Source of the DNA: Octopus bimaculoides
Lineage: Eukaryota
Direction: 5' to 3'
Length of the DNA: 44,741 nucleotides
Assembly (NCBI RefSeq): GCF_001194135.2
Contig: NC_068981.1
Span: 9,216,576 to 9,261,316, forward strand
Part shown: in pieces, positions 14,905 to 43,462 of the stretch
Layout: each line of letters begins with the position of its first letter
How positions within the stretch are numbered: position 1 is the first letter of the stretch
Program-made: the position numbers and the translations under genes
Notes under the pieces: model-generated
Seen by the model: only the letters and a program-made list of their open reading frames with translations
Told to the model about the DNA's origin: nothing
The model's database searches: none

Positions 14905-14945
14905 TTACGGTTCGTTCATGAAATCCTCCAAGTAAAGAAGTCTTT
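14905..14945 (-). CDS. AIRIM: AIRIM terminal coding exon (ERLLYLEDFMNEP*)
   Basis: Acceptor ttctttgtttttcag|, phase 1 compatible with exon 3. Aligns with the recalled human C-terminus DILLNVSFFLEE. The total CDS is 603 nt, or 200 aa. Confidence 0.75.
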
Positions 14946-15299
14946 CTGAAAAACAAAGAAACAAACAATAAAATTTACAGAAAATTCAACAATAAAACAA
15001 AGAAACAAACAATAAAAAGTCAATGTGAAAGAAAGAACAGTGAGTAAGGGTTTGTGTGCTGACAAATGTCTTGGTTAAATGTTTAGGAACAAACTGACAT
15101 TTGTGAAAAAGATGCAATCAGGATATTCTAATATTTTTTAAACAGGTAACAAATCATGATGGTACAAAAGAATATTTATCGTAAAACCCATCAGAAATAC
15201 AGAAAAAGAAAGATCTTTAAATAATCCAATCTCAGTAGATTCTTGATCATTTGATTGAGTTGAGACCAAACACAAACAAAATCAGTTTTTCACAATAAA

Positions 15300-15750
15300 T
15301 GCTAATTGTGAAGTTTCTGACAAAAGACTATTGTTAAATGCCACCATTCTCTCTCTTGCTACCCAGAACCATCTCACTTGTTAGCCAACAGCCATATTAT
15401 AGTGGCCATTCCCTCGTTAGACCACCAAATTCTCTTTCTCTCTCTATTCAGTTCCTACAGCCTACTCAAATACTTCATCTCTCTTCTCCTCCTCTGTCAA
15501 TGTTATCATCAATACTATCCTGCTGCTAGCATCCCTCTAGCCCCTTCCCAATTTCTGTACCCCTACCCCATCAATCTTTATAAGAATTACTTACCTAATT
15601 ACCTCTGTCCCACTTCCCCTATCCCAGCTTCCACACACTCTTGCAACCCCCCTCCACTTACTACTACTCCTACCTGAGGTGTCACCTGGACACTTCATCA
15701 CCACTCTCTCTCTCTCTCTTTGGAGATATCACCAAATCATTCTCTCTCTC
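15300..15750 (+). mobile_element. Pyrimidine-rich repeat, probable PLE 3' remnant
   Basis: Same compositional style as 5740-6325, 34260-34960 and 36190-36850. Confidence 0.3.
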
Positions 15751-16289
15751 CTTAATATGAACAGCCATGCAGCTGCTCAACAATCTGTTCGAAAATATAA
15801 GGACACAGATCGTGTCATATAGCCAGCTGGAGACAATGTCTCCTGGGGCTAAATTACAGCAACATTAGTCCTAAACCAGGACTGCCATGTTATGTTATGT
15901 TGGCGATCTTTACTATAAAAAAAGTTATTTAGATCTAAAATTGATTGGTGGCGTTACTTACTCTCCTATAACGTTGCTACAAATTTTGATGTAAACTTTT
16001 TCTACTGGAGCAAATCTCCATTGTTTTTTTCCCGTCAAAATGTAGCTAGGGACCAGTCCTCTTCAAAAATGTTAACAGTTTTTAATTTGGTTAAGAACTG
16101 AATTATTGACAAGCTCTGAAAGATGCTGCATGTGAGTAAATTGCGACCTTAAGAATATTATTCAACCACTACCGTAGTTGAATGATTCTCCATGATTAAA
16201 AGAAGTGTGTTTAAAAGAAATAAAAACAGGTTCCACACAACAGATTAAGTGTCAATAATTCCCTGGATTTGATAATCCACTCAGATGAA

Positions 16290-16550
16290 ATAGAAAACTT
16301 GTACCAATAAAGTGAAAGACCACACACTAGACTTTAGCAGATACCTCACTATTAAATTAATGAACCCATCAATTATTAGATATAGGTAAGATCGGCAAAA
16401 GATTACAGTAGTTCCTCTAATTCAACACCAAATGCAACTTGGCCTCTGGATGAATACAAGGGAGGTAATTGAGTGGTTAAACTGCAGAAATAAAATTCAA
16501 ATGAAGCTCGTTCTTCAGTTGGATATGGTTACAGCTCAATCACACTTCCC
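16290..16550 (+). mobile_element. Ancient Penelope-like RT fragment
   Basis: Broken translation KDHTLDF...KLMNPS..IGKIGK...WMNTREVIEWL...VLQLDM resembles the PLE RT segment KDHK.NF..RLINP.K..IGKISK..W.NT..VI.WF...F.QFDI. Confidence 0.55.
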
Positions 16551-17249
16551 CTATTAAAGGTAGCCATTAGGTTATGCTAGAATGATTACCTATATGGATG
16601 ACAGTGATATGCAGATAATCCTATACGTGTAGTTAGTTGTGACATCCCTTTACAGTTCATAAAAATGTTATGACTCCAGTGGGAGGGAACAAATGATTCA
16701 GTAGAAGTCACAAACCTGCTCAGACTTTATAACCTTCACAACAATAGATTAGTCTATAGATTGTTCATGAATGGTTTCTATTGAAATGATCAGACTTGTA
16801 ACTGGTCCGTACATTTACGTCCACACATAACACTAACCCATAGAATATCAACTGTATTAAGGACCTTTACATATTCTTATGATGTCTAGGATTTTCGAGG
16901 GTTTGCAATCTCTATTCCCATAAAATGGTTATTATAACTTTTTTTCTCTGCATGCAAAACTAAATTTCCTGTAAAAATTCCAATGGATTATTGCAATCTT
17001 ATACCAACACTGTTTGTATTTATTCTGACATTCCAATACAAGGTGAGCTGTGGTCTCTTCCGAATCATCGCACATTCTACAGTTGGTGAACAGCTCTGCC
17101 TATCTATCATCCTCTCTTGATCCAATCAATCTACCCTTATACTGCCATGATGATGACGATAGTGATAAATGTGATATTACATGCTTGAGATTCATGAAAT
17201 TTCCTGTTGCTGAAGTCCATAGCTCATCCAAAAACAAAAAACTAATGCA

Positions 17250-17700
17250 TCATCATCGTCATCATTCAACATCCGCTTTCCATGCTGGCATGAGTTACAT
17301 GGTTTGACTGGAACTGGTAAGCTGGAGAGCTGCACCAGGTTTCCGTCTGATTTGGCATCGTTTCTAGGGCCAGATGCCCTTCTTAACACCAACCACTCCA
17401 AGAGTGTAATAGGTGCTTTTTACATGCCACTGCCACAGGTGCCAGTTACACGACACCGGCATTGGCCATGACCATGAATTTGTCATTGCCCCAAACAGAA
17501 AAAAAAGAAAGCTACAGTATTCCAGTCTAGTACAAGTAGTGAAATGCCAGCAGAAAGTGTGGCCTCGCGTTGGATAGATAACAAGCAGTAAACAACTTAG
17601 GACAATTGTCCCAGTCTGTAACAATAAGGTGGAGGCTAAGATTCTGGCCATGCCCACCAATGCAACCCAAGATTTTATCAGGATCTTATTTTACTTGGAA
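17250..17700 (-). mobile_element. RTE 3' UTR/tail copy
   Basis: CAT-repeat tail followed by the family sequence ...ccgctttccatgctggcatg...gatgcccttc. Confidence 0.75.
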
Positions 17701-18059
17701 AGATGGGTGACCAAAAGATGGATCCCAACATGGACCAGGCTGGTGTGGTAGCAATGAGGGAGAACAAAGATTATAGCACTCAAGTTCAATCTGCAGCAGA
17801 ATAGAATGGATTTGTCTCTGAAGTTCCAGATGTTGGTGGCATCTGAGAATTTATCTGGCATCCCGGATCACTTTCAGTTTCAAGAGATTAAGCAAAATGA
17901 ATGATAGTAGAAGGGAGAAAACCACAGGTGCTAACCTATGTGACAAACCAGACCACCTGAAGGCTTTCTGACCTATGGAACAGCAAAGAGCAGAGTGCAT
18001 CAGACCATCGTCAATACCAACAATCACACGTCTACAACCAAAGAAGGAGAAGCAGTGAC

Positions 18060-18605
18060 AGTAAGAGAAAATGCCGTCAGAGTGTAAGTATCTTGAGAGA
18101 AAAGCTGAACATTAGAAGCATCAGTTGTGGCATGCAAGAGAGACGATTGCGCTGGTATGGACATGTGGTGAGAATGGAGGAGGATAGCTGCGTGAAAAAG
18201 TGCCACACCCTAACAGTTGAGGGAACCCGTGGAAGAGGTAGGCCCAGGAAGACCTGGGCTGAGGTGGTGAGGCAAGACCTTCGTACATTGGGCCTCACCG
18301 AGGCGATGACTACTGACCGAGACCTTTGGAAATGTGCTGTGCGTGAGAAGACCCGGCAAGNNNNNNNNNNGGCACATAAAAGACACCATTTCGAGCGTGG
18401 CCGTTTTCGTGCGGGTGACACGTAAAAGCACCCACTACACTCTCTGAGTGGTTGGCGTTAGGAAGGGCATCCAGCTGTAGAAACTCTGCCAAATCAGACT
18501 GGAGCCTGGTGTTGCCATCCGGTTTCACCAGTCCTCAGTCAAATCGTCCAACCCATGCTAGCATGGAAAGCGGACGTTAAACGATGATGATGATGATGAT
18601 GATGC
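18060..18605 (+). mobile_element. Young RTE LINE 3' end
   Basis: Intact ORF end (RRLRWYGHV..VEGTRGRGRPRKTW..DRDLWK), 3' UTR and (GAT)n tail. Confidence 0.9.
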
Positions 18606-18869
18606 ATACACAGAAGGGGGCCAAGAGCACATCCCCCACTGCTGACCACAACCACAAATAATAAGTATCAATGAAACAAAAGCCAGCAGTCTTTTCACAA
18701 TCTCCAAACACTTGGATTTTTCTAAAATAGAAAAACCTGGTCCTAAACTGACAATTTTTATCTAAGTGGTTTGTAAATTATTTCCTCGTATTGACCTTGG
18801 TGTCTGGCTGAAAACATAAGAGGATGAAAAAAAAGAATTATTGAACAACTACCAATAATAGTATCTAAC

Positions 18870-18985
18870 CTTGGATTTTATTGATGACTTTAGTGTCATC
18901 AAGTAACCAGGATTTGAGAAGTTGCTGCAGGATTGACACATCACCATATTTCATTTCATCAAGTAAATATTTCTTGAGGTGTAGC
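18870..18985 (-). CDS. AIRIM: AIRIM coding exon 3 (LHLKKYLLDEMKYGDVSILQQLLKSWLLDDTKVINKIQ)
   Basis: Follows the U12 branch site TTCCTTAAC (19003-18995). KYLLDEMKYGD..L.K.W aligns to recalled human KYLLSSIQWGD..LPKAW. Donor CAAG|GTTAGA. The exact 5' boundary is uncertain by a few nt (see findings). Confidence 0.8.
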
Positions 18986-19092
18986 TTAAAATTAGTTAAG
19001 GAAGCAAATTAATAAAGATGCAACTCATTAGTTTAGCTTGCCTGAAATAATCATTTATAAACATACTTTGTTTATACACAACTTCCCCCACT

Positions 19093-19093
19093 C

Positions 19094-19152
<59 letters not shown>

Positions 19153-19195
19153 CATACACACACACATACATACATGCACACACATATATATTACT
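19093..19195. repeat. (TA)n/(CA)n microsatellite inside the U12 intron
   Basis: Direct reading. Confidence 0.9.
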
Positions 19196-19594
19196 TATAA
19201 ATAAATACATCACCAACCAAAATAATAAAAATTGAAATAAATGGTTTCAGACTTCACAAAAGTGAATCCCCTCTTCATGAACTGGCAAAGGCCTATGGAT
19301 AAGGAGAACACCAGTTCAAATACAGCTGTAGGGAACCAGAAAATTACACCAGTACTAAGAAAAATAGAAACATTGAATATGTTCATCTTTTTCACATCTG
19401 TTTCTCCATGCTAACTTGGGAATGGTTATTAAGACATTCTTTTAGTACTGGGTGCCCTTCCTATCACTAACTCTTAGTGTTTTTCAAATAAGGGGCCACA
19501 TATTTCACATGTCTATGAAAGCAAAGTCAGAGGATAATTTGTTGTCAGGAAAATTACAACAAACTACAGTACATGCAGTTCAGTAGTTTTCTTT

Positions 19595-19822
19595 TTTTTT
19601 TTGTGCTGGTCACATAAAAAGCACCCATGCTGGTGTCATGTACAAAGCACTTGTCCTGGTGCCATGTAAAACACACCCAGTACACTTTGTAAAATGGTTG
19701 GTGTTAGGAAGGACATCCAGCCATAAAAAAAACCATGCCAAATCAGACAGCTGGAGTCTGATACAGCTCCTTTGAAACCATTCAACCCATGCCAGCATGG
19801 AAAACAGACGTTAAATGATGAG
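19595..19822 (+). mobile_element. RTE 3' UTR/tail copy
   Basis: aaaagcaccc...ggaaggacatccagc...acgttaaatgatga. Confidence 0.75.
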
Positions 19823-19999
19823 GTTTGGACAAAAGAAAGGGCTGAAACAGGTTTCTTGCTATAGAGGAACTACATGGTTAGAGTGGGTAGGAGTGATCAA
19901 GCATAAGCTGAGTGGGAGTGGTGACAGAAGAACAGGGGATGTGAGAGGGTAGAGGTTGCAAGATTATATGAGGAGAGACTGAGGGATGGTAAGAGATGG

Positions 20000-20760
20000 A
20001 AAGAGGGTGAAGGAGCTGGGGTTCAAATATAATGAATGAAGAATAAAGGTTGAGGACTGGCTGATGATAAATGCACTTCTCTCCATCACAATTTTCCCTG
20101 ACTCGCTGTCTTGCAAATCAAAACACATCAAGCTGTTGGTTCTCACACCACAGAACATTGGCAAACTTCTTCCTTTCTGCTTCACCCCTAGCTAAGTATA
20201 CCTATCCCTTAGATTCTATTCTCACTACCCAAAATAGTTCCCTGTTCCAGTCCTTCCAGGCCCGCTTCTTTGCTCTAATGGCTCTGTCAACTACACAGTT
20301 CCACTACCATGTCACTCCAAGTCTGGTTGGGACTTTGCAACCAGCCACAAATTTGGTCTGTAGCTCTCAATGAGTTGTCTCGTAGGAACTTCCAGTTATC
20401 CGCTATGTTACCTGTCTGTAACTCTTCCTCCTTCTCATTAAATGCTTCAGTTAGGATGTCTCTAAATCTCTGGCTATTCAAAAGAGCCTTAAGCTTCCAG
20501 GTCCTTTTCCAAATTGGCTTGCTTCTTGAAATCCTTCATGCCTGTGGTCTGAAACCACTGACTAATCTATGCTGAGGGATACATTCTTCACCTGGGAAAG
20601 TCTCTGCATTTATGAGCAACCATGAATCTTTCTTTCCGATGAGAATGTAGTCAATCTGGCTAGTATGGTCACCAGATTTATAGGTTATCAGGTGACTGAC
20701 TGGTTTCCTGAAATTATATATATAGCCTCCAGAACCTCAATTTCACCAAGACGGGTGGAT
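20000..20760 (-). mobile_element. Degenerate RTE fragment (endonuclease C-terminus/linker)
   Basis: SQIDYILI..DRKRFMVAHKCRDFPGEECIPQHRLV. Confidence 0.7.
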
Positions 20761-21172
20761 GTATCACTGCTCATCTCTCTATTATGACATGGAGGGCTAG
20801 ATAAATAAGAGGGGACTAAGAATTGAAACACACATACACACGTTTGTATCAGTTTAACCTCATCACTTGAGCTTAAGTCAATCTATTGCAAGTAATCAAA
20901 GCAAATGACATGTTCCTCATTCCTGCAAAGACTGACCTACAGGTGGCCAGGTTATTCATTACACATCAATTTCACCAATCTGGGAGATAATTCTATAGAG
21001 TTCAGAACCAATGGAATATATTTCACTAGCTTATCACTCAATCAGTCATCATAATTGCTTTCCATGTGGACAGGAGTAGACACTAATATTCAATAAATAT
21101 TCACTTGATTTATTCCTTAAAAAAAAAAATGAAGTGATCAATAATGTAAAGAATGAAATCAACAAAGGATAT

Positions 21173-21334
21173 TGTACAAAAACCTGTCTTTCTGTATCAT
21201 CTAACCATTCCAACATGGTAGCCAGAGTTGGGGACATAGCTCTGCTCTCAGTCAAATAAACCATGTCGGGTTTTTGTTCAAAAGCATTGATTCTTGCTTG
21301 ATTCACTTTATCATAAGATTTTTGAAATTCACAT
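21173..21334 (-). CDS. AIRIM: AIRIM coding exon 2 (ICEFQKSYDKVNQARINAFEQKPDMVYLTESRAMSPTLATMLEWLDDTERQVFVQ)
   Basis: Acceptor ttttcatttttag| at 21335/21334, phase compatible with exon 1. SPTLATMLEWLDDTER matches recalled human SPSVADMLEWLQDIER. Ends at the U12 donor CA|ATATCCTTTG. Confidence 0.88.
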
Positions 21335-21489
21335 CTAAAAATGAAAAGACAGAGATATTACTTCAATAAAATAGAATACAGTTAATAACTTTATCATATC
21401 GATATCTGCCAATTCTGATAGAAACATTAATAAAAAAAAATATGTACAATAAAGACTGTAAACAAACAGGAAACAACTTCTATCTCATT

Positions 21490-22379
21490 CCAGGGTGAAA
21501 AACTAGAGGTAGTCGATAGCTTCTGCTATCTGGGCGACCAAGTTAGTAGTGGGGGTGGGTGCGCTGAAAGTGTAGCTGCTAGAATAAGAATAGCCTGGGC
21601 AAAGTTTAGAGAGCTCTTACCCCTGCTGGCGACAAAGGGACTCTCACTCAGAGTAAAAGGCAGACTGTATGACGCATGCGTACGAAGAGCCATGCTACAT
21701 GGCAGTGAAACATGGGCTGTAACTGCTGAGGACATACGTAAGCTCGCAAGGAATGAAGCCAGTATACTCCATTGGATGTGTAATGTCANNNNNNNNNNNN
21801 NNNNNNNNNNNNNNNNNNNNNNNNNNNNNNNNNNNNNNNNNNNNNNNNNNNNNNNNNNNNNNNNNNNNNNNNNNNNNNNNNNNNNNNNNNNNNNNNNNNN
21901 NNNNNNNNNNNNNNNNNNNNNNNNNNNNNNNNNNNNNNNNNNNNNNNNNNNNNNNNNNNNNNNNNNNNNNNNNNNNNNNNNNNNNNNNNNNNNNNNNNNN
22001 NNNNNNNNNNNNNNNNNNNNNNNNNNNNNNNNNNNNNNNNNNNNNNNNNNNNNNNNNNNNNNNNNNNNNNNNNNNNNNNNNNNNNNNNNNNNNNNNNNNN
22101 NNNNNNNNNNNNNNCCGGCAAGCCAAGTAAGATCGTTGCCAGTGCCCCTGGACTGGTTCTTGTGCGGGTGGCACATGAGATGCACCATTTCGAGCGTGGC
22201 CGTTTTCGTGCGGGTGACACGTAAAAGCACCCACTACACTCTGAGTGGTTGGCGTTAGGAAGGGCATCCAGCTGTAGAAACTCTGCCAAATTAGATTGGA
22301 GCCTGGTGTTGCCATCCGGTTTCACCAGTCCTCAGTCAAATCGTCCAACCCATGCTAGCATGGAAAGCGGACGTTAAAC

Positions 22380-22410
<31 letters not shown>
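21490..22410 (+). mobile_element. Young 5'-truncated RTE LINE (internal gap)
   Basis: EVVDSFCYLGD..RIRIAWAKFREL..GRLYDACVR.AMLHGSETW is open in frame. The 3' UTR is nearly identical to the copy at 18370-18605. Confidence 0.9.
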
Positions 22411-22509
22411 TACAAACCCAAAAGATAAAAATTATATTTCAAGATCAGAACTAATGACATAACATGACATACAGATTTCACTAACACTCTCCAATTCCAT
22501 ACGTCCACC

Positions 22510-23300
22510 TCTATCATCATCATCATCATTTTCGTCCACTTTCTAGGTTGTCATGGGTTAGATGAATCCTCATAATCAGAGTCAGCTGCTATTTGAGTCA
22601 CCACCTTTCTAGATGAGTCAGGAACCACATTTTCCTTATACATTGTTTTCTTCACAGGGTTTGTATGGCTGGATGTTCTTCCTAACACTAACCACTGTAC
22701 AACTGGGTATATTTTACCATGGTATTAACACTAGAGAGATTGTCTTGTCCTCAGCAAAACTAAAAGATTTTCTCTATTCTATACTGTGCCTATTTGTTTA
22801 CCAACCACCTTACAGAGTTCACTACTGAGTACAGTTTGTCTCAGCACCAACACTAAAGAGATTACTTTCTACACAGTCAGAGTATCTCAACTTTATGTTG
22901 TCTGTCTGTTCAAGGTAATCTAACATTCCTGTAATTTGAGGGTATGCCCTGACACATCTTCACTACAACCATATGTCTCCCCTGCAGCAAGAAACCTGTG
23001 CCTGTCCCTCTATGCGACTTCGACCTGTCATCATGTGACATCTGTCAACCTCTCTCAATACTACTTCTCCCACCCTCAGCTGAAGGGTCTCGTGAGTCAC
23101 TTGGTTAACCTCACTAGTGCTGGCAGTACATAAAACGTAACCAGTACTTTCTGTAAAATGACTGGCATTAGGAAGGACATCCAGCTGCAGAAACCAAGCC
23201 AAAGCAGACATTTGAGCATTGTGCAATCCTCTATCTCACCATCTGCTGTCGAACTGTTCAACCCATGCCAGCATGGATAACAGACGTTAATTGATGATGA
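22510..23300. mobile_element. Older RTE 3' UTR copies (one minus at about 22510-22740, one plus at about 23100-23300)
   Basis: Family motifs and CAT/GAT tails. Confidence 0.6.
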
Positions 23301-23461
23301 TAATTATACATGCACACGTATTTATACATGCACCTATATCTACACACAGAGTAAATAAGATGGAAAAGGAAAAAATATTTCCAAAGGTAGGGGAGCGAGT
23401 AAATGATGGTCATCCATGTACAAATCTTGTATTAGAGTCAATGAGAAATTGAAATCCTTAC

Positions 23462-23745
23462 ATTGTGGCTTGAACTGCACACAGTTTTTGTTCTATCTTC
23501 TCCACAATCACATAAAGTAACTTGGATTTTACTTCATTCAGACTAGCAGGGAGCTCTAAAGATTCCACATTTGCTTCATAACAACACTGGTATTGTTCAC
23601 ATAAGTTAAAAAGTTCCTTAAGTTGCACTTCTTGCTGACGAGCACATTCCTGCCACACAGATGCACAATGTTGTACTGCAAGAAATGCATGACGAAGCTT
23701 GCATTTCAAGACTTCGGTTTTTTGAACTTGGACAATGTTTGGCAT
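23462..23745 (-). CDS. AIRIM: C1orf109/AIRIM orthologue, coding exon 1 (MPNIVQVQKTEVLKCKLRHAFLAVQHCASVWQ...LCAVQAT)
   Basis: ATG at 23745, preceded by a strong acceptor (ttttcttttgcag|, exon begins 23756). Donor AT|GTAAGG at 23462/23461, phase 2. Resembles the recalled human C1orf109 N-terminus (LKKCFPVVEEQQGLWQ). Confidence 0.85.
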
Positions 23746-23995
23746 ATTTCATTCTACTGCAAAAGAAAAAAGAAAATAACTTGTTTACAAAAAAAATTAA
23801 GTTTCTATAATGTTCTAAATGTTTAATATAAAGTCACCAGAGAAATTATTTTGAATAATATTTTTAAAATAATTTATAAATATCATTTACAACCCAGAAA
23901 GAGATGGATAAGGTTTGCTTGCATATTAAAATAGGAAAATAAAAAACAAATGTTTCCTTTTTTTTCTATTCTACCAATTTATGTTATTGAATTAG

Positions 23996-24098
23996 ATGAT
24001 ATACCTTGGAAAACAGGTGTTGTCCTATAAAATGATATTCTTGGGCAAACTGGTGTTCTCCTTGAATGATATTCCTGGGCAAATTGGTATTCTACTCA
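23996..24098 (+). repeat. Degenerate tandem repeat, 3 units of about 35 bp
   Basis: atgatat..ttgg(g)caaa.tggtgtt.tcct repeated three times. Confidence 0.7.
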
Positions 24099-27440: not shown

Positions 27441-27444
27441 TTTT

Positions 27445-27816: not shown

Positions 27817-27819
27817 TAT

Positions 27820-30997: not shown

Positions 30998-31027
30998 GAG
31001 AGGCTGACATCGCTGAACCTCTTCTTC

Positions 31028-31515: not shown

Positions 31516-32050
31516 GTAAGTAGCTTATATGCCGATCGTTTCTATAGTTCCCTTCTCTAAGCCATCTATGATTGTTGTAAGGTTCGCGCCTGCCAACCTG
31601 TGAGGTTGATGGACACAGTCTTAGATGGGATGGTCATGGTTGAGATGTCTGCTAGATCAGCTTTCACTTGATGCTTAAACAACTGACATATCTATAGATT
31701 GTGACCCCCGACTTTGTTTCTTCGTAACACTTGTTAAAATGTTTTTTTTATACTACCTTCTTGCTGAAATATCTTTCTCAGGTTGTAAATTACGATTAAT
31801 TTGATGTTTCAAACAGAAATCTGAGAAAAAGAAACAAAAATCTTCAATTAACAGAAATTGGGAAAATCAAACCTGGAAGGACCGTCCGAAATTCAACCCC
31901 GCCCCCAATTTCCTCTGTCCCTCTAAATTTTGTCACTGTATATATAACCTACTCTTTAGAAAACTTATTTCTGCTGCATGTGAGAAAACAGTATCGACAA
32001 CATTATCTAAAACTCATTCATTTAAAAAAAATTATTTGAATTTATTTTGT

Positions 32051-32090
32051 AACTGAGTTCTAGAAGCTCTGTAGCTTCTAGAACTCAGTT
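32051..32090. repeat. Perfect 18-bp hairpin with a 4-nt loop
   Basis: aactgagttctagaagct-ctgt-agcttctagaactcagtt. Confidence 0.95.
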
Positions 32091-33078: not shown

Positions 33079-33109
33079 ACGCACACATAACATACATCTT
33101 CACTAGGGC

Positions 33110-34255
33110 TCAATTCTTAGCCCACCCTTATTCATCATAGTCCTCCACGCCATAACAGAGGAATTCAAAACTGGGTGCCTGTGGAAACTGCTATATGCTG
33201 ATGACCTTGCTCTTATTGCAGAATTGGGGAAGAAATTCCAAGTATGGAAACAAAACCTGGAATCAAAGGGCTTTTAAGTTAACCTAGCTATGACCAAAGT
33301 TGTAGTTAATAAGAAAGAAGATAAAACTCTCTTTCAATCAGGTAAATGGCCCCTGGTCAATATGTAGGAAAGGAGTTGAAAGAAATTCCATTCACTGCAC
33401 CCAGTGTAAACTATGGATACATAAGAGGTGCAGTGGAATCACAGGTAGATTTTTTTGTATGTGACAGATGTGCAGGAACAATAAGCACTAAGGATGCACA
33501 GGACTTAGACTCTCTCAAAAGCCCAGGAGACTCTCTTGAGGTTGTAGATAGTTTTTCTGTTACCTAGGTGACCAAATTAGCCATGGTGGAGGATGCTCTG
33601 AAAATATTATTTCCAGAATAAGAAGAGGATGGAGGAAGTTCAGAGAGCCGTTACTTCTGTTGGCAACAAAAGGACTCTCTCTTTAAGTAAAAGGTAGATT
33701 ATATGATGCTTTTCGTATAAACGGCTATACTCGATGGTAGTGAGACATGGGCTCTGAATGCAGACGACATGCATAGACTGGAGGGAAATGAAGGGATTGT
33801 GCTCTGTTGGATGTGCAACATCAGTGTGCATGTACGACAAAGTGCAAATGTGTATTGAGAGAAAAGTTGAGCATAAGAGGAATCAAATGTAGCATCCAAG
33901 AGAAGAAGACTACGTTGGTTTGGACATGTGATGCATATGATTGAAGACAGAGGTATAAAGAAGNNNNNNNNNNNNNNNNNNNNNNNNNNNNNNNNNNNNN
34001 NNNNNNNNNNNNNNNNNNNNNNNNNNNNNNNNNNNNNNNNNNNNNNNNNNNNTATGAATGAGGACAGCTGTATAAAGAAGTGCTGATCACTGAAAGTGGA
34101 TGATACCCTGCAGAAGCGGGAGACCCGGGATGAAGTGGTGGGGACCGATTTCAAGATGTTGAGCCTTATGGCGGAAACGACAATGGACTGAGATGTCTGG
34201 TGATGTGAAGTTTTTGAGAAGACCTGTCCATGTCAGTGGAACTGAGTTCTAGAAG
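33110..34255 (+). mobile_element. Degenerate RTE RT-to-3' fragment, right arm of an inverted pair
   Basis: GSILSPPLFIIVL...LLYADDLALIAE. Near-identical to the reverse complement of the left arm over about 33450-33963. Confidence 0.85.
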
Positions 34256-34259
34256 TGTT

Positions 34260-34922
34260 GTGTGTCCCATCCACACTCAACAAGAAGACTTATCACACAC
34301 TCTACCACAACAAACCAAATTATGTCTCTACATCTTTTCTCTTCCTCACATTTCCACTTCATGCACTATGCTTACCTCCCACTCTCCAATCCTGTCCTCT
34401 TGGCCCCCCTGTGCCACTGTATCATTGTTCTCCACTAACCCCCGACCTGTGTGTTTCACCTGCATGCCCTGTCTCAATGTATTATTGCTCTCTGCTAGCC
34501 TCCGACCTGTGTGTACCATCCACACAGAAACAAGAAACCTTTTCGCTCACCCTACCCCAACAAACCAATCTACATCTCTTCCTCACATTTCTTCCTTCAT
34601 ACACTATGCCTACCTCTCACTCCCCAGTCCTGTCCTCACGGCCCTGTTCCTCTATCATTGCTATCCAGCAGGCCCCCTCCCCGACTCTATATACCCAGGC
34701 TTTTGTTACTCACTCCCCCTCCCTCTGCACTCTTTAATCACATTGCCTTCACAATATCCTGTCACTTACATTATGGCATTCAAACCTCAAGGGTAGGCCC
34801 TGGCACTTGCCACCATCTATATCTCTCTCTGCCTTTACTCAACCATCCCATTTATATTCTGATCCCCATCACTTGTGAGTATGTCTGGCATTTTGCCACC
34901 ATCTCTATCCTGCTGTCTCCCT

Positions 34923-34960
<38 letters not shown>
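34260..34960 (+). repeat. CT-rich repeat with an internal duplication of about 250 bp (probable PLE remnant)
   Basis: ccacac..aacaaga..c.acc.caacaaaccaa..tctacatct...ttcctcacattt occurs at about 34270 and about 34520. Confidence 0.4.
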
Positions 34961-35254
34961 CNNNNNNNNNNNNNNNNNNNNNNNNNNNNNNNNNNNNNNN
35001 NNNNNNNNNNNNNNNNNNNNNNNNNNNNNNNNNNNNNNNNNNNNNNNNNNNNNNNNNNNNNNNNNNNNNNNNNNNNNNNNNNNNNNNNNNNNNNNNNNNN
35101 NNNNNNNNNNNNNNNNNNNNNNNNNNNNNNNNNNNNNNNNNNNNNNNNNNNNNNNNNNNNNNNNNNNNNNNNNNNNNNNNNNNNNNNNNNNNNNNNNNNN
35201 NNNNNNNNNNNNNNNNNNNNNNNNNNNNNNNNNNNNNNNNNNNAAATTTTTTTT

Positions 35255-35570
35255 GTCTTGCAAGTACTTGGTGACACTGTCAGTGCAGGTGTCGCTTAAA
35301 AGCACCCAATCCACACTGTAAAGTGTTTGGAAGGGCATCCAGCTGTAAAAACCTTGCCAAAACTAACCTTGCCTGTGCTCGTTCCACGAAAAAAGCACCA
35401 AGTCCATTCTGCTGCTGAGTGGTTGGTGTTAGGAAGAGCATCCAGCTGTAAAAATCCTGCCAAAGCAGTTACAGAAGTCTGGTGCAGGCTTCTGCCTGGC
35501 TGGCTCTTGTGAAACTGTCCCACCCATGCTAGCATGGAAGGCAGATGTTAAATGATGATAATAATAATAT
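35255..35570 (+). mobile_element. RTE 3' UTR/tail copy with a duplicated segment
   Basis: ggaag(g/a)gcatccagctgtaaaa occurs twice, followed by a GAT/AAT tail. Confidence 0.7.
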
Positions 35571-36189
35571 GAGGAAACAAAGCCAAATTGTGTGAATTAT
35601 CCAAAACTCCTCTCCCCACGTTCAGAGAAATTTATTTTTACAAATTCTGATGTAATTGGAATTTACATCATCTGAAGCATATATGCAGAAAATTTCATTT
35701 AAAACCAATCATTTTTCAGGAAGTTATGAGGAAACAATGGTGAGGGCACACACTTGTGTAGTTGCTTTTCTGGGTAAATTTATAGGAACACCCCCCCCCC
35801 CTCTTGATTTCTGTGGGGAAGTTTTTTTTTTTTTTTTCTTTTCTTCTTCTGAACATGCCACAAAGGAATTTTTCCCCACTGAAATTAGGAATCATATTTG
35901 TTAACACAAAAAAAGTGGTAAAGAAAACTCTGAGGTTGGGAGTTGAAGGTCATCTTTTAACATTCAACTTTCATTCTGGTAGGGGTTGTGAGGGTTGGCA
36001 AGATCTGACTGATCTGAACACTGCATTGGGCTTTGATGTCTGCTCTGACATGGTTTCTATGGCCAACTACTTAACAAAGTGTACAGGATGCTCTTTTCAT
36101 GGCACCAGCATTAGTGAGGTTGCCATACAACTTGCAAGACATAACATTGTCTTCGATTGAGCGAGTTTACAGTAGAGCTTTATACTAGA

Positions 36190-36850
36190 GATGGGAAGGG
36201 GTAAGAAAAAAGCAGGTTCATTGAAGAGAAGATACATGGCTTCTGAGAAATGGGAGAGTGGATGGGGTGAAAGTGGAAAGAGAGGTAAACAATAGGGGTG
36301 ATGGTGTGTCAGGGTTGACCCTCATATTACAGGGCAAGTAGAAGTGAGTGGGTAGCAGTTACAAGAGTGTATGGGGATTATGAGTGATGGGGTGAGTATG
36401 TAGAAAAAGATGGGTTGAGGAGTGGCTGATGACTGTGGTGATTGGCTTGGTTTGAGAGGTAAAAGTAGAGAATGGTGGGCAAGGATGGATACTTGAAATG
36501 GGAGGAAGCTTGAGGATTAGGTAATGACTGTCAGTGCAGAAGTGGTTGAAGAGAAGCATAAAGTTGACATGAGTGTTTAAGAGAGAAGCAGGCATTGTGT
36601 ATTGAGAGAATGATGTAGAATGGTTGAGAAGGAGAGGAGTTAATTTGGTAGGACAGGTGAGAGAACAATGCAAAATGTGAGTGGAGGGAGACAATGTTAA
36701 GAGAGGTGAGAAAGTTAACTGGTATCACCAAACAACATGATGAAATATGCAGTTCTGAAGGTAATGGAGATGTCAGTGATAAAATAAAGATGGATGGTAG
36801 GGAAGGCTTGAAGGGGGAAATTGTGTATGTGTGTGTGTATTTATACACAT
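36190..36850 (-). repeat. Purine-rich tract (CT-rich on the minus strand), probable PLE remnant
   Basis: Composition only. Confidence 0.3.
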
Positions 36851-37298
36851 TGAGTTTTCAGAAACCCAGTTTCACTAAAATGGGTAGATCTTGAACTCCC
36901 TGTATCTCAGGTCAGTTTGATCATTTGTCAAATCTTCTGTAAGGTCCCAATTCCTGAGTTAATTACGTGACTCAACTTTGGACATTAAGTTCAATGTTGG
37001 ACTTTTTTTCTTTGTTTTAATTCACTAATTTTCCACATCAACTTAATTATCATAACTTTGGCAAGTACAGTGGTGCCTAAGTATCATGTGTCTTCCATAC
37101 TTTGTGAAATGATTAAAATATTAGTTAATGAGCTAATGATTTTGTTTTGTTGTTTTTTTCAACATGTATTGATTTCCAATTAGTTGTTTGAGGACCAGTA
37201 TATTAAATATGTTAACAACACTTGTTTAATATTTTTCCTTCAATTCATTTATATTCATTAATATAGAATTTTATTAACTTTACATAAATGAATTTCAG

Positions 37299-37393
37299 TT
37301 GAAGAGAAAAAACAAGAATTTGATGATAAAATTAGTCTAACATTAAAGAAGATCGACACTTACTGCCATATAGGGATCCAGCAAATACCTAAG
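37299..37393 (+). CDS. CDCA8: Borealin coding exon 2 (FEEKKQEFDDKISLTLKKIDTYCHIGIQQIPK)
   Basis: tttcag| acceptor and AAG|GTGAGA donor, phase compatible. Aligns to recalled human [32 protein letters not shown]. Confidence 0.85.
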
Positions 37394-38119
37394 GTGAGAA
37401 ATTCTTTTATCAATTTTAGAAGTAATTAATAAATAATCAGAATTTTACTACTTGAACAAAAACATTAATAGTCAAAGTTTAGTTGTCAGTAATATATGTG
37501 TGTGTGTGTAAACAATTACAGGTATATCAAGTGCCATATAACAAATTCTGGATTTAATGGAATCATCTCTGCCTCTAGAGGATATGTCATAATTACCATT
37601 GAGGAGGAGGGATAATCTCAAGTATCAAGGATGACCTGCCATTAAGGAAAGGGGCAGACTTATTGTCTGGAAATAAGAGGGCAGTCATGGGCATGTGTTT
37701 CTGGCTCATTAGCAAATATCTAATCTAAGCAAGGGACTTAGACTCATATAAAAAAAAGAATAGAATGCATTTATGTCCTAAGTAATTTACATAATTTATG
37801 TCCTTAGGTAATTTACATAATTTAAACAAAGATGAGCTGAGAGTGGGTCAGTGGCAGAGACAAATACTGGTGTATTAAATACGATACAACATAAATTCTT
37901 GATTTATGAAAATTATTTCTGGCAAGGGATAGTTTAGTGGTTGGGGGGGGGGGGTCAATGTAATGTATGGATGGAAGGAACAATATTGAGAGATGAAGAA
38001 TAGTTAACAAGTGAAATAGTTCTGGATAGCAAGAAGAAAAATAAAGTGATATCAACAGAGAGATAATGGGTGGAGGGGAGGGGGGCGTGAAGAGAAGAAA
38101 GAGATTGAGTGAGGTGTCC

Positions 38120-38630
38120 ATTTATGCACTGGTTTGGTCATATGATGCAGATGGATGCCAACAGCTCCATAAAGAAGTGCTCTCAGAGTAGATGGAACTT
38201 GCGGAAGAGGGAGACTCAGGAAGACATTGGATGAGGTACCGAAGGATGACCTCAGGACACTGAACTTTTCAGATGACATGACAAAAGACCAAGGGACCTG
38301 GCACCTTGCTGTACTCAAGAAGACCTGTCTCCCACGGCAGAAGTGTTAAGGCCCCCCCACCCCTGGTGAAGAGGAAGATTGACCTCTAAGAGTTTTGTGC
38401 TGGTGACACATATAAAGCACTCATTTCAGTGCCATGTAAACACACGTGTACCAGTGCAACATAAAAAGCACCCAGAATACGCTGTAAAGTGGCTGGCATT
38501 AGGAAGGTCATCCAGCTGTAGAAGCCATGCCAAATCAGACTGGAACCTTGTGCAGCTCTGGCCAAACAGTCCAACCTATGCCAACATGGAAAACGGATGT
38601 TAACGGTTTATGATGATGATGATGATATAC
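38120..38630 (+). mobile_element. RTE 3' end and tail
   Basis: WFGHMMQMD..L.VDGTCGRGRLRKTLDEV, followed by the family 3' UTR and (GAT)n. Confidence 0.8.
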
Positions 38631-38659
38631 ACACAGTGGATCCAGAGGTCAGTTTTGCC

Positions 38660-39900
38660 AAGGTGGGCAAGTCTACTCAAAAACCACATATCGCCAGTCA
38701 TTCCAGTCCTTTGTCATCTCCTCCATGAGTGTGAGGGTTCTGAGGTCATCCCATGTCTTCCTTGATCTCCCTCTTTTGCAAGCTCCAGCCACATTAAGTC
38801 ACCAGCACTTCTTTTATACAGTTGTCCTCATCCATACCAGGGAAGTCTTTTTTTCTTGCATACTACATCATTCTTCTTATACCCAGTTTTTCATGCACAC
38901 TTATATTGCATATCTCACAGAGCTTGCTCTTCTCAAATCCTCTGCATCCAAGGCCCATATCTCACTACCTGCACCATTACGGTTCTAGCACAAGTATTAT
39001 ACAATCTACTCCAAGACAGAAGACCTTTGTTGTCAATAGCTCCTTGAACCTTCTACAACCCATTCTTACTCTGGTTACTATACTTTCAGAACAATGAACT
39101 ACTACTTCCACTGAGCTCCTACACCTACTTACTGCTCCAGTGCATCTAGTGCATATGAAGCTCACATTTTCAAATAGCCTGCCTACGATTCGACTACAAC
39201 TCTTGCCCATAACCTATATGGAGTTTATATCTACTCCTTTTTAGCATATTGACCAAGGTCATTTCCTTGAAGATACCAGAGGTCTATCTTTCCTCCTTAT
39301 TAAAAAATTTCATCTTTGCTAAGATCTCTTGGGTTCTAGGTTTAGCTACCATTCTCGGAATTTCCTTTCTAATTCCTTTATAGATTCAGCTATGAGAAAA
39401 TCATCAGCGTACAAGAGTTTCCATGGATAGCCAGTCTTAACCCTTTAGCATCCAGCTTACCCTGTCAAATGTTATGATCATTCATTCGCATTGTTTTGAA
39501 TTAATCTTGTATTATCCTATAGCTTTGAGATTTTGATGTGATTGTTCATTCTTAGAATGACATTGTAAAGTAGATGTGAGAGGCCAGATTTAGCTGCTTT
39601 AAATATAAACAGGTAGAAGATTTTGGCCGGACATGGCTGATGTAAATGCTAAAGGGTTAACTTCTCTGTGATGGCCTATAGGACTCTGATGGATTGGAGA
39701 GGAGTGAGAGCTGAGCCTTGATAAACTCCTAGTTTTGCGCTAAATTCATCACTGAAATCCTTGAATCTCATTTTCTGCATCTTTGCATATGACTTGTAGA
39801 GCCAAAGTAGGATTAGGTACATTGAAGGGAGACAGCCTCATTAAAGATGGTAAGTTAGGCTAATTAAGTCATTTGCCTTTTAAATGATTCCTTTTTTACT
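38660..39900 (-). mobile_element. Degenerate RTE RT region carrying a MITE insertion
   Basis: AITEK(L)KTGYPWKLLYADD reads through across the MITE site. Confidence 0.75.
39437..39660. mobile_element. piggyBac-type MITE (TTAA TSD, 11-bp TIR CCCTTTAGCAT)
   Basis: ttaa|ccctttagcat ... atgctaaaggg|ttaa. Removing it restores the RTE coding continuity. Confidence 0.9.
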
Positions 39901-40571
39901 GACAAAGCTGAAAAAACAGTCCCTCATGTGATCTTTGGTTTCTCATTAAATCATTGTAATAGCAAATGATATTTGACATGATCTGTCAACTCACACTTTT
40001 AATAGACATACACATCACACAAAAAACACAAGAGGCTTAATTCTTGTCCTGATCACCCACTTTTTACCTGAAATATAGCTCAGGCTATTTATTGTCCTAA
40101 TGGTAAATTTTGGGAGTTATATTAATATATTTTTTTGGCTAAATGGGAAGTAAAATGAACATAATATCATAAGAAAACTACAATTGATAATAAAAATCCA
40201 GTTTCATTTTTATATTGACATACAAAGTACACTTAGAACATCCCTCAAAACACTAAGGACAAGATTGTTCTTGCCTATATTCATTTCTGGACAGTGGGTG
40301 GTTTTGTTGGTATTTGTATAACTTTTTACACTTGTTGCACCATTATAGTGGCTCACTATAAAGTGAGAGCAGTGTTGAAATTTTAGCTTGTATGGTTATA
40401 AACTAATTCTGTACACTAGACATTTGGCAAGAAAAATTTCAATTTTAAACAAGCTTCTGAGTGTCTCTTTTATAAAACAATTCCTATATTTTCAACATAA
40501 ATATAGCAATAAATAGCTTAACTGTTCTTAAACTGATCATTTTTCTTAATTTATATCTGTATATTTTTCAG

Positions 40572-40605
40572 ACATTACGGAAAATGAAGTTGCAAGATTT
40601 TATTG
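40572..40605 (+). CDS. CDCA8: Borealin coding exon 3 (34 nt; TLRKMKLQDFI)
   Basis: tttttcag| acceptor and G|GTAAGC donor. Aligns to recalled human ALREMNWLDYF. Confidence 0.82.
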
Positions 40606-40654
40606 GTAAGCTTACTTTGTTTGTAAAATAATAATTTATAGATATATACAGATC

Positions 40655-40800
40655 TAGGCATGGCTTTGTGGTTAATAAGTTTGCTTTGGTTGTAGCCCCA
40701 TGGTTCCAAGTCCAATTTTACCGCACAACACTTTGGGTAAATATCTCGACAAGAGTAAAGGTTCCTCTCAATGCTATGTTGTCTCTGCTTGTTCATCAAC
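40655..40800 (+). mobile_element. tRNA-derived SINE, degenerate
   Basis: ggcatggct.tgtgg.taa.aagtttgct...ggttcc..gtcc head. Confidence 0.6.
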
Positions 40801-41371
40801 CACTTTACAGAGGGTTCTAGGGTGCATTTTATTATGATACCTGCACTATGATGTACTTACTTGTTTGCTCAAGACATAGTTTGAGAGAACAAGTAGTAAG
40901 AACTCAATGACAAAAGAAGTGTGCTAGGTAGGTGACAGCAGGAGCAAGGGTCTGCTGGTAGAAGCAATAGAAGAAATATTGGATACTAGCAGACATGGAC
41001 AATGATCATATTAAGTAAAAGAAGGGTCTAAAGAGATCCAACACATAGGCTTAATGGTGGATGACAAAGTGATAAAGAGGGAAGTAAGGAGAGTGAATAT
41101 GTGTTGGTTCCTTACCAGACTCCACTACATGAGCAGCATGATATGATAGAGAGGAGAGAGACAGGTTCAATGCCATTACTGGTTAATGTGCTACAGGGGA
41201 ATAGAAGAGATCTGGCAAAGTACTGAAGACAAGAGAACCGAAAGAGTACCAAAGAGGCAGCAAATGTAGATGTGTCTTAGCTTCCATCATTACCACTGGT
41301 TCTTAAGGTTCGTTTTGTCATGTTTGCATAGGTAAGTGAGTCTTCTCCAGCATTGCATGTTGTCTTAGTTC

Positions 41372-41655
41372 TTTGTCATTGCCGCTGAGACTCTGGCTTG
41401 TGTACGAACCGCCATGCTACATGGCAGTGAAACTTGAGCCGTGACTGCTGAGGACATGCGTAAGCTTGCAAGAAACGAGTGACACGTAAAAGCACTCACT
41501 ACACTCTCGGAGTGCTTGGTGTTAGGAAGGGCATCCAGCTGTAGAAACTTTGCCAGATCAGATTGAACCTTGTGCAGCCTCTGGCTCACCAGTCCTCAGT
41601 CAAACTGTCCAACCCATGCCAGCATGGAAAGCGGACGTTAAATGATGATGATATA
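41372..41655 (+). mobile_element. Internally deleted RTE copy (AMLHGSET joined directly to the 3' UTR)
   Basis: gcaagaaacga|gtgacacgtaaaagcac junction, followed by a GAT tail. Confidence 0.75.
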
Positions 41656-42114
41656 TATATGCACATACACATACATGTCCTTATCTTACCATACCTTCTG
41701 AACAACCTCATAGGCCTGCCGTACCTCATCTTTAACACCTCCACTCTTGTTCATTACTCACTACATTCATCTTTAGCCCAATCTCTAACCATGTCAATCT
41801 CTTATGAAATTACCTACCCTTTCCTACCCCATCTGACCAACTATCTATACTCCCCGTCTTATACTTTGACAGTATGCTCTGACACCCTGTCACCAACATT
41901 TTTATCTTCTTTCCAGCTACCCTCACATAGTGTAGGATAGTCATATAGCTCTTCTATAGCAAAATGTCTGTGCTTGTCACTTCCATCGTACTTCCAAAAT
42001 GTGGACATAAAAACAAATATTTGTGTTCCTTAAATACTCTAAATTTTATAAAGAACCCTCAATGTATATGTTTTTATTGTAAAATGGAAGTAATGAAATG
42101 GTAATATTTGCATT

Positions 42115-42270
42115 GTGTGTTATCATTTAACATTGATTCTCCATGCTGGCATAGGTTGCATGGTTTGACAGAATCCATACCAGATTCCAACTGTCTGTTT
42201 TGGCATGGTTTCTACAGCTGGATGCCCTTCTTAACGTCAACCACTTTATAGTGTGTACTCGGTGCTTTTT
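42115..42270 (-). mobile_element. RTE 3' UTR/tail copy
   Basis: Family motifs. Confidence 0.7.
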
Positions 42271-42543
42271 GTCTTTTTATATCCTTCTGCACTCATTCAC
42301 TTTACAATAGATACACTTTTACAGCCTACTCCAAAAAGACTGTGGTCAGTTTCAAAATATACTTTTTGCTCTGAGGATGAGCAAACTTTTCCAACGTATT
42401 TAAAACAGCTCCAATGAATCTGAGTAAACATCATCACATGACTAAGTAAATCAGTGTATATACACACAATTCACAGACTATATACAAATAAATACAGTAT
42501 TTAATTCTTGGTAGCTTTCAATTCTTGCTATTTAACATTTCAG

Positions 42544-42628
42544 CTGCTGGTGGGACATTTGAAAGTGCTCTTCAGTACCTCACAATGGAAAAAGAGAACA
42601 CAGTTGATGAAAATGTTGTTGGATCCCT
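42544..42628 (+). CDS. CDCA8: Borealin coding exon 4 (AAGGTFESALQYLTMEKENTVDENVVGS)
   Basis: tttcag| acceptor and CT|GTAAGT donor, phases consistent. AGG...AL resembles recalled human ALGGNKQAL. Confidence 0.78.
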
Positions 42629-42689
42629 GTAAGTATCTTTTACTTGTTTCGGTCATTAAAATGCTGCCATGCTGGAGCATCAATATGAA

Positions 42690-42990
42690 GAACACCTATT
42701 TTTTAAAGCTTGGTACTTATTATATTGGTTTCTTTTGCTGAACTGCTATGTCACAGGGACATAAACACACCAACACCAGTTGCTCAGTGGTGGTGGGGGA
42801 CAAACAAAGGTGTATACACACACACACACACACACACAATGTGCTTCTTTCAGTTTTCAACTACCAAATTCAAGCTTTTGGTTGGCTCAAGGCTATAGTT
42901 AAAGACACTTGCCCAAGTTTCCATGCAGTGGAACTGAACCTGAAACCTTGTGGTTGGGGACCAAACTTCTTACCCTACAGCCATGCCTAT
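42690..42990 (-). mobile_element. tRNA-derived SINE with internal (TG)n
   Basis: A-box-like tggctgtagggt and B-box-like ggttcagttcc on the minus strand. Confidence 0.7.
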
Positions 42991-43407
42991 AGTATTTCAG
43001 ATTATTTTTTTAAATTGCATTTTTCTTGTGTGTTAAAACATTGAAATATCGTTGGAAGACTTGGGGTCCCAGTGATAAATACACAACAAGGGAAACCTCT
43101 TCATTTCCCCCTTTTCCCCTCATTGTTTTATTCACTTTCTTATTTGCTTTAGGTGTGTCTCCTGGTTGTTAGAGTGGGTGCACTGTATCCCCACACATCA
43201 TGAAAGGTGACTGTTAGGGTTGGTGTCAAGTAGAGTATCTTATCTATAAAACACTGCCTTAAAAAATCCTGTCCAACCCATGCTTGCATGGAAAAGCATG
43301 GGTGATGTGTGCACAGCCCTGAGAAAATGTAGAAACATTTGCTGTTAAAGTCTTGTTTCCTTGTCACAAAAATTGTTTTTTTCCTTATATCAAACTTTTC
43401 TTTCCAG

Positions 43408-43462
43408 AAATGCCATTGCTTGTGGTGAGAAAGCTTCCAAAAATCAACTTTATAATGATCCA
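43408..43462 (+). CDS. CDCA8: Probable Borealin coding exon 5 (LNAIACGEKASKNQLYNDP); gene continues beyond the window
   Basis: cttttctttccag| acceptor and CCA|GTAAGT donor. Open and in phase with exon 4. Lies in the divergent linker, so there is no homology support. Confidence 0.65.

What the first reader, a model, noticed from the sequence alone, without database searches (positions are those of the whole stretch)
14905..43462. Head-to-head AIRIM (C1orf109)-CDCA8 pair, as in human, retained in an apparent cephalopod genome
Seen in sequence: AIRIM on the minus strand and Borealin on the plus strand diverge from a 7.6-kb interval that contains no other recognisable gene. Established: human C1orf109 and CDCA8 are divergent neighbours on 1p34, and coleoid genomes are heavily rearranged. 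Inference: this is an ancient bilaterian microsynteny held together by a shared bidirectional promoter, coupling a SPATA5-complex (ribosome maturation/replisome) cofactor to a chromosomal passenger complex subunit. The AIRIM coding start is preceded by a splice acceptor, so an unseen 5' UTR exon must exist, plausibly close to the CDCA8 promoter.
Basis: partly seen in the sequence, partly recalled or inferred. Interest (0 to 1): 0.7.

Follow-up and report, generated by a model that had tools for sequence, protein, structure and literature searches.

The report
Octopus AIRIM–Borealin divergent gene pair
In Octopus bimaculoides the ribosome-maturation cofactor gene AIRIM and the mitosis gene Borealin lie back-to-back as in humans, a scallop and a brachiopod; this is a real but fairly ordinary old neighbour pair, and a shared promoter in octopus is still unproven.

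Summary
The window is Octopus bimaculoides chromosome CM046601.1 (100% match). AIRIM on the minus strand is complete. Four exons (23745..14905) reproduce the database proteins exactly, match Pfam PF15011 over its full length, and align with human AIRIM. Borealin on the plus strand is real but only partly present. Exons 1-5 (31383..43462) encode residues 1-134 of a 320-residue product. Position 43462 is an exon end with a GTAAGT donor, not the gene end. All five N gaps are intronic or intergenic.

The 7,637 bp between the start codons hold no recognisable gene. The same head-to-head pair is found in O. vulgaris, O. sinensis, the scallop Mizuhopecten (3.7 kb apart) and the brachiopod Lingula (945 bp apart). 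Papers list it as a human head-to-head pair. It is absent within 10 kb in Lottia, a sea urchin, a crinoid and a tick. So the pair is old but has often been lost.

A shared promoter in octopus is plausible but not shown. The supporting points are:
- a conserved splice acceptor 11 nt before the AIRIM ATG;
- a cuttlefish cDNA with a 6.7-kb 5'UTR intron;
- one CpG-rich island at 29.8-31.7 kb carrying CCAAT and CDE/CHR-like motifs;
- one strong minus-strand donor, at 30811.

Both genes are already annotated. This is a new member of a known kind.

The parts
23462..23745 (-). AIRIM first coding exon (ATG 23745-23743; donor GTAAGG follows 23462)
   Evidence: PF15011 positions 1-72
23746..23758 (-). 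11 nt of 5'UTR preceded by a polypyrimidine tract and CAG splice acceptor (AG at 23758-23757); includes an out-of-frame ATG at -7
   Evidence: conserved in 4 octopods
21173..21334 (-). AIRIM exon 2; ends at 21184 with the U2 GT donor (196-aa form) or at 21173 with the U12 donor ATATCCTTT (200-aa RefSeq form)
18986..21172 (-). U12-type intron (AT-AA; branch site TTCCTTAAC about 12 nt before the 3' end), overlapping a U2 GT-AG alternative (21183..18985)
   Evidence: human C1orf109 is a listed minor-intron gene
18870..18985 (-). AIRIM exon 3
14905..14945 (-). AIRIM last coding exon, stop TAA at 14907-14905
   Evidence: aligns to the C-terminus of human AIRIM
23746..31382 (.). Interval between the two start codons (7,637 bp): repeat relics, one 473-N gap, no recognisable gene; probably mostly AIRIM 5'UTR intron
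29800..31700 (.). Block that is not CpG-depleted (o/e 0.8-1.7 against a window median of 0.31), spanning the Borealin 5' end; CpG is strongly depleted from about 1.6 kb upstream of the AIRIM ATG onwards
30991..31042 (+). Candidate Borealin core promoter: CCAAT box (ATTGG 30991-30995) and GGCGGccagTTTAAA (CDE/CHR-like, 31028-31042); the CCAAT box and the GGCGG core are kept in three Octopus species, the spacer and CHR hexamer differ in O. vulgaris and O. sinensis
   Evidence: (unique in window, 0 of 100 shuffles)
30810..30817 (-). Only strong minus-strand splice donor in the interval (GGTAGG|GTAAGT, GT at 30811-30810): candidate end of an AIRIM non-coding first exon; inference only
31383..31515 (+). 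Borealin coding exon 1
   Evidence: 62% identical to Lingula exon 1
37299..37393 (+). Borealin exon 2
40572..40605 (+). Borealin exon 3 (TLRKMKLQDFI)
42544..42628 (+). Borealin exon 4
43408..43462 (+). Borealin exon 5, followed by donor GTAAGT; the gene continues beyond this point and probably beyond the window

Best explanation
These are the octopus orthologues of AIRIM (C1orf109, cofactor of the SPATA5/AFG2 ATPase complex) and Borealin (CDCA8, chromosomal passenger complex). They lie in a divergent 5'-5' arrangement inherited from an early bilaterian ancestor.

In compact genomes the two start codons are under 1 kb (Lingula) to 3.7 kb (scallop) apart. In Octopus, lineage-specific repeat insertions have stretched this to 5.3-7.6 kb.

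The most likely layout in octopus is as follows. The Borealin promoter lies at about 31.0 kb, with a CCAAT box and a CDE/CHR-like element. AIRIM starts with a short non-coding exon transcribed the other way from the same CpG-rich island, with a candidate donor at 30811. That exon is spliced over a roughly 7-kb 5'UTR intron to the acceptor 11 nt before the AIRIM ATG.

Shown: gene identities, exon structures, orientation, and conservation in other phyla. Inferred: the position of the AIRIM TSS, promoter sharing, and any selective constraint.

My separate estimates: identity and orientation 0.97; common ancestry of the arrangement 0.8; shared promoter region in octopus 0.45.
For: Identity:
- AIRIM.
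- Borealin.
- Window equals O. bimaculoides.

Same pair, same orientation:
- O. vulgaris, and O. sinensis and O. bimaculoides.
- Mizuhopecten and Lingula, both checked independently by tblastn.
- Human: adjacency and head-to-head status.

Upstream exon:
- A conserved acceptor precedes the ATG.
- Sepiid cDNAs show a non-coding exon 1 and a 6.7-kb 5'UTR intron at the homologous position.

Promoter region:
- CpG profile.
- A unique CDE/CHR-like match.
- High conservation of 29.7-31.4 kb among three Octopus species.
- A single strong AIRIM-sense donor, at 30811, in all three species.
- NF-Y is reported to activate human CDCA8.
Against: - No octopus transcript, CAGE or chromatin data could be reached, so the AIRIM TSS is not located.
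- The candidate donor lies inside a SINE-like element and may be fortuitous.
- The three Octopus species are too close (about 90% identity throughout) for conservation to single out an exon.
- The O. vulgaris Borealin model starts its CDS about 1.2 kb further upstream, which would put the motif block inside an intron if that model is right.
- In Sepia no Borealin exon lies within 3 kb upstream of AIRIM exon 1.
- The pair is broken in four of the eight non-octopus lineages sampled.
Confidence: 0.6

Rival explanations
1. Linked but separately promoted. The two genes are ancestral neighbours, but in octopus AIRIM has its own promoter somewhere inside the 7.6-kb interval. One candidate is the conserved, CpG-normal block at about 26.3-27.1 kb. 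Under this reading nothing is shared with Borealin.
For: - A second stretch that is not CpG-depleted lies at 26.7-27.5 kb. Part of it is conserved in O. vulgaris.
- RefSeq lists three transcripts for one protein isoform, which hints at alternative 5' ends.
- Sepia shows no Borealin exon near the AIRIM first exon.
Against: - No strong AIRIM-sense donor exists there. The only one in the interval is at 30811.
- Part of that block (27148-28678) is an O. bimaculoides-specific insertion.
- The Sepia 5'UTR intron length (6.7 kb), applied to octopus, lands at about 30.5 kb.
Confidence: 0.3
2. Neutral retention. The adjacency is ancestral but persists only because no breakpoint happened to fall in a short interval. 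There is no regulatory constraint and no functional coupling.
For: - The pair is lost in Lottia, sea urchin, crinoid and tick.
- In the sea urchin AIRIM has acquired another head-to-head partner, a Ribosomal_S17 gene 167 bp away. AIRIM therefore works without Borealin next to it.
- Lingula and scallop are slow-evolving genomes.
Against: - The pair is retained with the same orientation in the heavily rearranged octopus genome, even though the interval grew to 7.6 kb and so became a larger target.
- 5'-5' pairs are the class enriched among conserved metazoan pairs.
Confidence: 0.35
3. Independent (convergent) juxtaposition of the two genes in lophotrochozoans and vertebrates.
For: Absence in the two echinoderms and the tick leaves a phylogenetic gap between lophotrochozoans and vertebrates.
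Against: A specific pair out of about 20,000 genes, in the same 5'-5' orientation, arising twice is very unlikely. Three lophotrochozoan classes or phyla share it.
Confidence: 0.03

Closest known systems
Human C1orf109(AIRIM)-CDCA8 head-to-head pair at 1p34.3
   Same: Same two orthologous genes, adjacent and divergent. Human sources. A CCAAT box lies in the octopus Borealin upstream region, and NF-Y is reported to drive human CDCA8. The U12-type intron of AIRIM is shared.
   Different: The human TSSs are within 1 kb by the definition used. In octopus the coding starts are 7.6 kb apart and the TSSs are unknown.
Conserved ancestral microsyntenic pairs (CAMPs) of Irimia et al. 2012, such as HSPD1-HSPE1
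   Same: A pair of unrelated genes kept adjacent across phyla, in the 5'-5' orientation that dominates that class.
   Different: I could not confirm that this pair is in their list, because the supplements are not held. It is lost in Lottia, a species that keeps most CAMPs. Nothing was tested outside Bilateria.

Membership tests
AIRIM / C1orf109 (Pfam PF15011 CA109-like) | Full-length match to the family profile above the curated cut-off | tested here: met
   61.6 bits against a cut-off of 27, profile positions 1-161 of 161
AIRIM / C1orf109 (Pfam PF15011 CA109-like) | End-to-end similarity to experimentally characterised human AIRIM, with no other family competing | tested here: met
   9gwj_A E 1.4e-12 over residues 12-200 of 202. 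All 39 hits among 1.84 billion representatives are proteins of 95-292 aa, most about 200 aa; those named or looked up are C1orf109/AIRIM homologues or PF15011 matches.
AIRIM / C1orf109 (Pfam PF15011 CA109-like) | Conserved U12-type intron after the MLEWL motif | tested here: met
   /ATATCCTTT in Octopus; /GTATCCTT in six other bilaterians at the same codon position; human gene listed as a minor-intron gene
Borealin / CDCA8 | N-terminal helix domain (PF10444) that joins INCENP and Survivin | tested here: met
   36.4 bits against a cut-off of 24.4, positions 1-56 of 57; gapless alignment to human Borealin residues 8-81
Borealin / CDCA8 | C-terminal Borealin domain (PF10512) | not testable with these tools
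   It lies outside the window. The precomputed annotation of the same gene in the same assembly lists PF10512.
Bidirectional-promoter (head-to-head) gene pair | Divergent orientation with no gene between | tested here: met
Bidirectional-promoter (head-to-head) gene pair | Transcription start sites less than 1 kb apart | not testable with these tools
   No TSS or transcript data for octopus. Only indirect support.
Ancient metazoan microsyntenic pair | Same adjacency and orientation in several phyla | tested here: inconclusive
   Present in Mollusca (Cephalopoda, Bivalvia), Brachiopoda and human. Absent in Lottia, two echinoderms and a tick. Non-bilaterians not sampled.

The most novel reading that the evidence does not exclude
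The AIRIM and Borealin start sites have stayed within a few hundred bp of each other for more than 500 million years. In octopus a roughly 7-kb 5'UTR intron absorbed all the repeat insertions, so that one cell-cycle-type (CCAAT plus CDE/CHR) promoter region still drives both a ribosome/replisome-quality-control cofactor and a mitotic passenger-complex subunit.
Probability: 0.35. Interest if true: 0.5.

Novelty: new member of a known kind. Interest (0 to 1): 0.3.

Why it matters
If the promoter is truly shared, this pair would be a clean case in which a regulatory constraint keeps two unrelated proliferation genes together, even in a genome known for large-scale rearrangement. It would also show how a long 5'UTR intron can buffer repeat insertion without separating the start sites.

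As it stands, the finding adds one documented example to the known class of conserved 5'-5' gene pairs. It also corrects the gene extents in this window. It has no bearing on gene discovery, because both genes are already annotated in RefSeq.

Tried and rejected
- A word-indexed search with AIRIM exon 1 alone found nothing, although an identical protein is in the database.
P0001 was used instead.
- A 27-sequence invertebrate profile returned only 7 proteins. Species names were then recovered through cluster look-ups.
- I first read 42544-42628 as the C-terminal Borealin domain and tried to fit a 320-aa exon chain inside the window. The scallop exon 3 and a motif search showed that it is exon 4, directly after exon 3. 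That earlier reading is rejected.
- The Logan contigs of P0124 turned out to be genomic, not transcripts, so they say nothing about the UTR.
- The Sepia UTR exon has no detectable similarity in the window.
- The supplements of Irimia et al. 2012 and the paper by Dai et al. 2015 are not held.
- The promoter motifs in the scallop and Lingula intergenic regions were too loosely arranged to claim cross-phylum conservation.
Full report
**Source and gaps.** The window matches locus L003 of Octopus bimaculoides assembly GCA_001194135.2, chromosome CM046601.1, at 100% identity, including the positions of its N runs. The gap-free assemblies of O. vulgaris (L001) and O. sinensis (L002) align collinearly at 84-96%.

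- The gaps at 18361-18370 and 21789-22114 lie inside repeat-rich stretches (18074-18600 and 21450-22407). These stretches have no counterpart in the other two species, whose flanks abut directly. They are O. bimaculoides-specific insertions in AIRIM introns 3 and 1.
- The gap at 29207-29679 is intergenic and corresponds to 547 bp in O. vulgaris.
- The gap at 33964-34052 is in Borealin intron 1, and its flanks abut in O. vulgaris.
- The gap at 34962-35243 is also in intron 1, but beyond the loci I could fetch, so its continuity is untested.
- No gap touches coding sequence.

**AIRIM.** On the minus strand I built a four-exon model by eye from ORFs and splice sites.
- It scores 61.6 bits on Pfam PF15011 (cut-off 27) over the whole profile.
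- It aligns with human AIRIM (PDB 9gwj_A) from residue 12 to 200 at E 1.4e-12.
- It is 100% identical to an annotated 196-aa O. vulgaris protein. The same 90% cluster holds the RefSeq O. bimaculoides and O. sinensis protein named 'ribosome biogenesis protein C1orf109 isoform X1'.
- All four database isoforms are reproduced exactly from window coordinates.
- A full HMMER search of 1.84 billion representatives found 39 relatives, most of them about 200 aa (a few fragments and one 292-aa sequence). Those I could name or place are C1orf109/AIRIM homologues, so orthology is not in doubt.

**Borealin.** On the plus strand, the exons are 31383-31515, 37299-37393, 40572-40605, 42544-42628 and 43408-43462.
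- All have canonical CAG acceptors, and all donors begin GTAAG or GTGAG.
- Together they encode 134 residues. These score 36.4 bits on PF10444 (cut-off 24.4) and align without gaps to human Borealin residues 8-81.
- The gene called at this place in the same assembly gives a 320-residue product hitting PF10444 and PF10512.
- The gene therefore runs on past 43462, which is an exon end followed by GTAAGT.
- No Borealin-like sequence is seen in 43463-44741, so the C-terminal half is probably outside the window.

**The interval.**
- The two ATGs are 7,637 bp apart.
- ORFs of 70 aa or more in between have no credible Pfam match.
- Rfam and ARAGORN find nothing.
- No gene is called there in three annotated Octopus genomes.
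- The interval contains repeat relics.

**Conservation of the pair.** I fetched the genomic surroundings of AIRIM orthologues.
- The upstream divergent neighbour is Borealin in O. vulgaris, O. sinensis and O. bimaculoides (5.3-7.6 kb between coding starts as annotated).
- It is also Borealin in the scallop Mizuhopecten yessoensis (3,705 bp) and the brachiopod Lingula anatina (945 bp).
- tblastn confirms Borealin first exons there independently. Lingula is 62% identical to octopus exon 1 at E 1.9e-12.
- For human, two papers list C1orf109 and CDCA8 next to each other in 1p34.3. A pan-cancer study names 'C1orf109-CDCA' among head-to-head pairs, defined by TSSs within 1 kb. The strand assignment beyond this rests on my own knowledge.
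- The neighbour is not Borealin in four lineages. In Lottia it is a PQ-rich 328-aa gene. In Strongylocentrotus it is a Ribosomal_S17 gene 167 bp away. In Antedon it is a 717-aa product with no Pfam hit on record. In Ixodes it is a 163-aa product with no Pfam hit on record. tblastn finds no Borealin exon in these four loci.
- In Sepia pharaonis nothing is annotated within 10 kb upstream, and no Borealin exon is detectable.
- A specific pair in the same orientation in molluscs, a brachiopod and vertebrates is best explained by common ancestry. The frequent losses show that any constraint is weak or lineage-dependent.
- This is the known class of conserved, mostly 5'-5', microsyntenic pairs. I could not check whether this pair is already in that catalogue.

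**Promoter question.** The AIRIM ATG is preceded at -11 by a polypyrimidine tract and CAG, identical in four octopod genomes.
- Sepiid cDNA contigs map to the Sepia pharaonis genome with a non-coding first exon (L007 3048-3178). A 6.7-kb intron follows and ends 17 nt before the ATG.
- In the window, CpG is depleted overall (median o/e 0.31). It is not depleted at 29.8-31.7 kb, and it is strongly depleted from about 1.6 kb upstream of the AIRIM ATG onwards, in O. vulgaris too. This fits an AIRIM transcription unit that begins well upstream of its coding start.
- A CCAAT box at 30991 and GGCGGccagTTTAAA at 31028-31042 resemble the CCAAT plus CDE/CHR layout of G2/M promoters. I recognise that layout from my own knowledge. 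The second pattern is unique in the window and occurred in none of 100 shuffles. The CCAAT box and the GGCGG core are kept in the three Octopus species, while the spacer and CHR hexamer differ.
- NF-Y is reported to activate human CDCA8.
- The only strong AIRIM-sense splice donor in the whole interval is GGTAGG|GTAAGT at 30811. It is conserved in all three species and unique in the window.
- Together these make a first AIRIM exon at about 30.8-31.0 kb plausible, back-to-back with the Borealin promoter. None of this is transcript evidence.
- Three points cut against it. The donor sits in a SINE-like element. The three species are too similar for conservation to be informative. The O. vulgaris Borealin model starts about 1.2 kb further upstream.
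- I put promoter sharing in octopus at about 0.45.

**Verdict.** The deep ancestry is supported but patchy. The shared promoter is a reasonable, untested inference. Both genes are already annotated, and the phenomenon belongs to a known class. Interest is modest.

Noticed in passing
window 18979-21183, minus strand: AIRIM intron 2 is a U12-type intron with AT-AA/AT-AC ends (donor ATATCCTTT, branch site TTCCTTAAC), overlapped by a U2 GT-AG pair 12 nt upstream. The splice choices give the 200-, 196-, 157- (frameshift) and 154-aa (exon 3 skipped) database isoforms. The same intron position has /GTATCCTT in Sepia, Lottia, Lingula, sea urchin, crinoid and tick. Human C1orf109 is a known minor-intron gene, so octopods switched the subtype from GT to AT.
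   Followed up: yes
L012 6430-12886 (Strongylocentrotus purpuratus): In the sea urchin, AIRIM is head-to-head with a Ribosomal_S17-domain gene, with only 167 bp between coding starts. This is a different partner, related to ribosomes.
   Followed up: no
window 23746-23756, minus strand: An out-of-frame ATG lies 7 nt upstream of the AIRIM start in the same exon (tagaATGaaatATG). It opens a 44-codon overlapping ORF and is kept in four octopods. It may affect translation through leaky scanning.
   Followed up: partly
window 17245-17465, 18371-18612, 19599-19821, 22170-22402, 35372-35575, 38129-38635, 41396-41665, 42119-42270, 44512-44740: A short interspersed repeat is present in about ten copies within the window, in introns of both genes. 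Several copies are absent from O. vulgaris and O. sinensis, and the assembly gaps sit beside them.
   Followed up: partly
window 32222-33078 and 33082-33963: An inverted duplication of about 0.86 kb lies in Borealin intron 1, next to the 89-N gap. It is also visible in O. vulgaris and O. sinensis.
   Followed up: no
L001 about 4652 (equivalent to window about 30160): The O. vulgaris Borealin model (342 aa) starts its CDS about 1.2 kb upstream of the ATG used in O. bimaculoides and O. sinensis (320 aa). An in-frame stop before the common ATG rules out a simple extension, so one of the annotations differs in exon structure.
   Followed up: partly
L007 3040-3070 (Sepia pharaonis): A canonical E-box (CACGTG) lies at the start of the cuttlefish AIRIM non-coding exon. 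Octopus has CACATG next to the CCAAT box at about 30965-30975.
   Followed up: no
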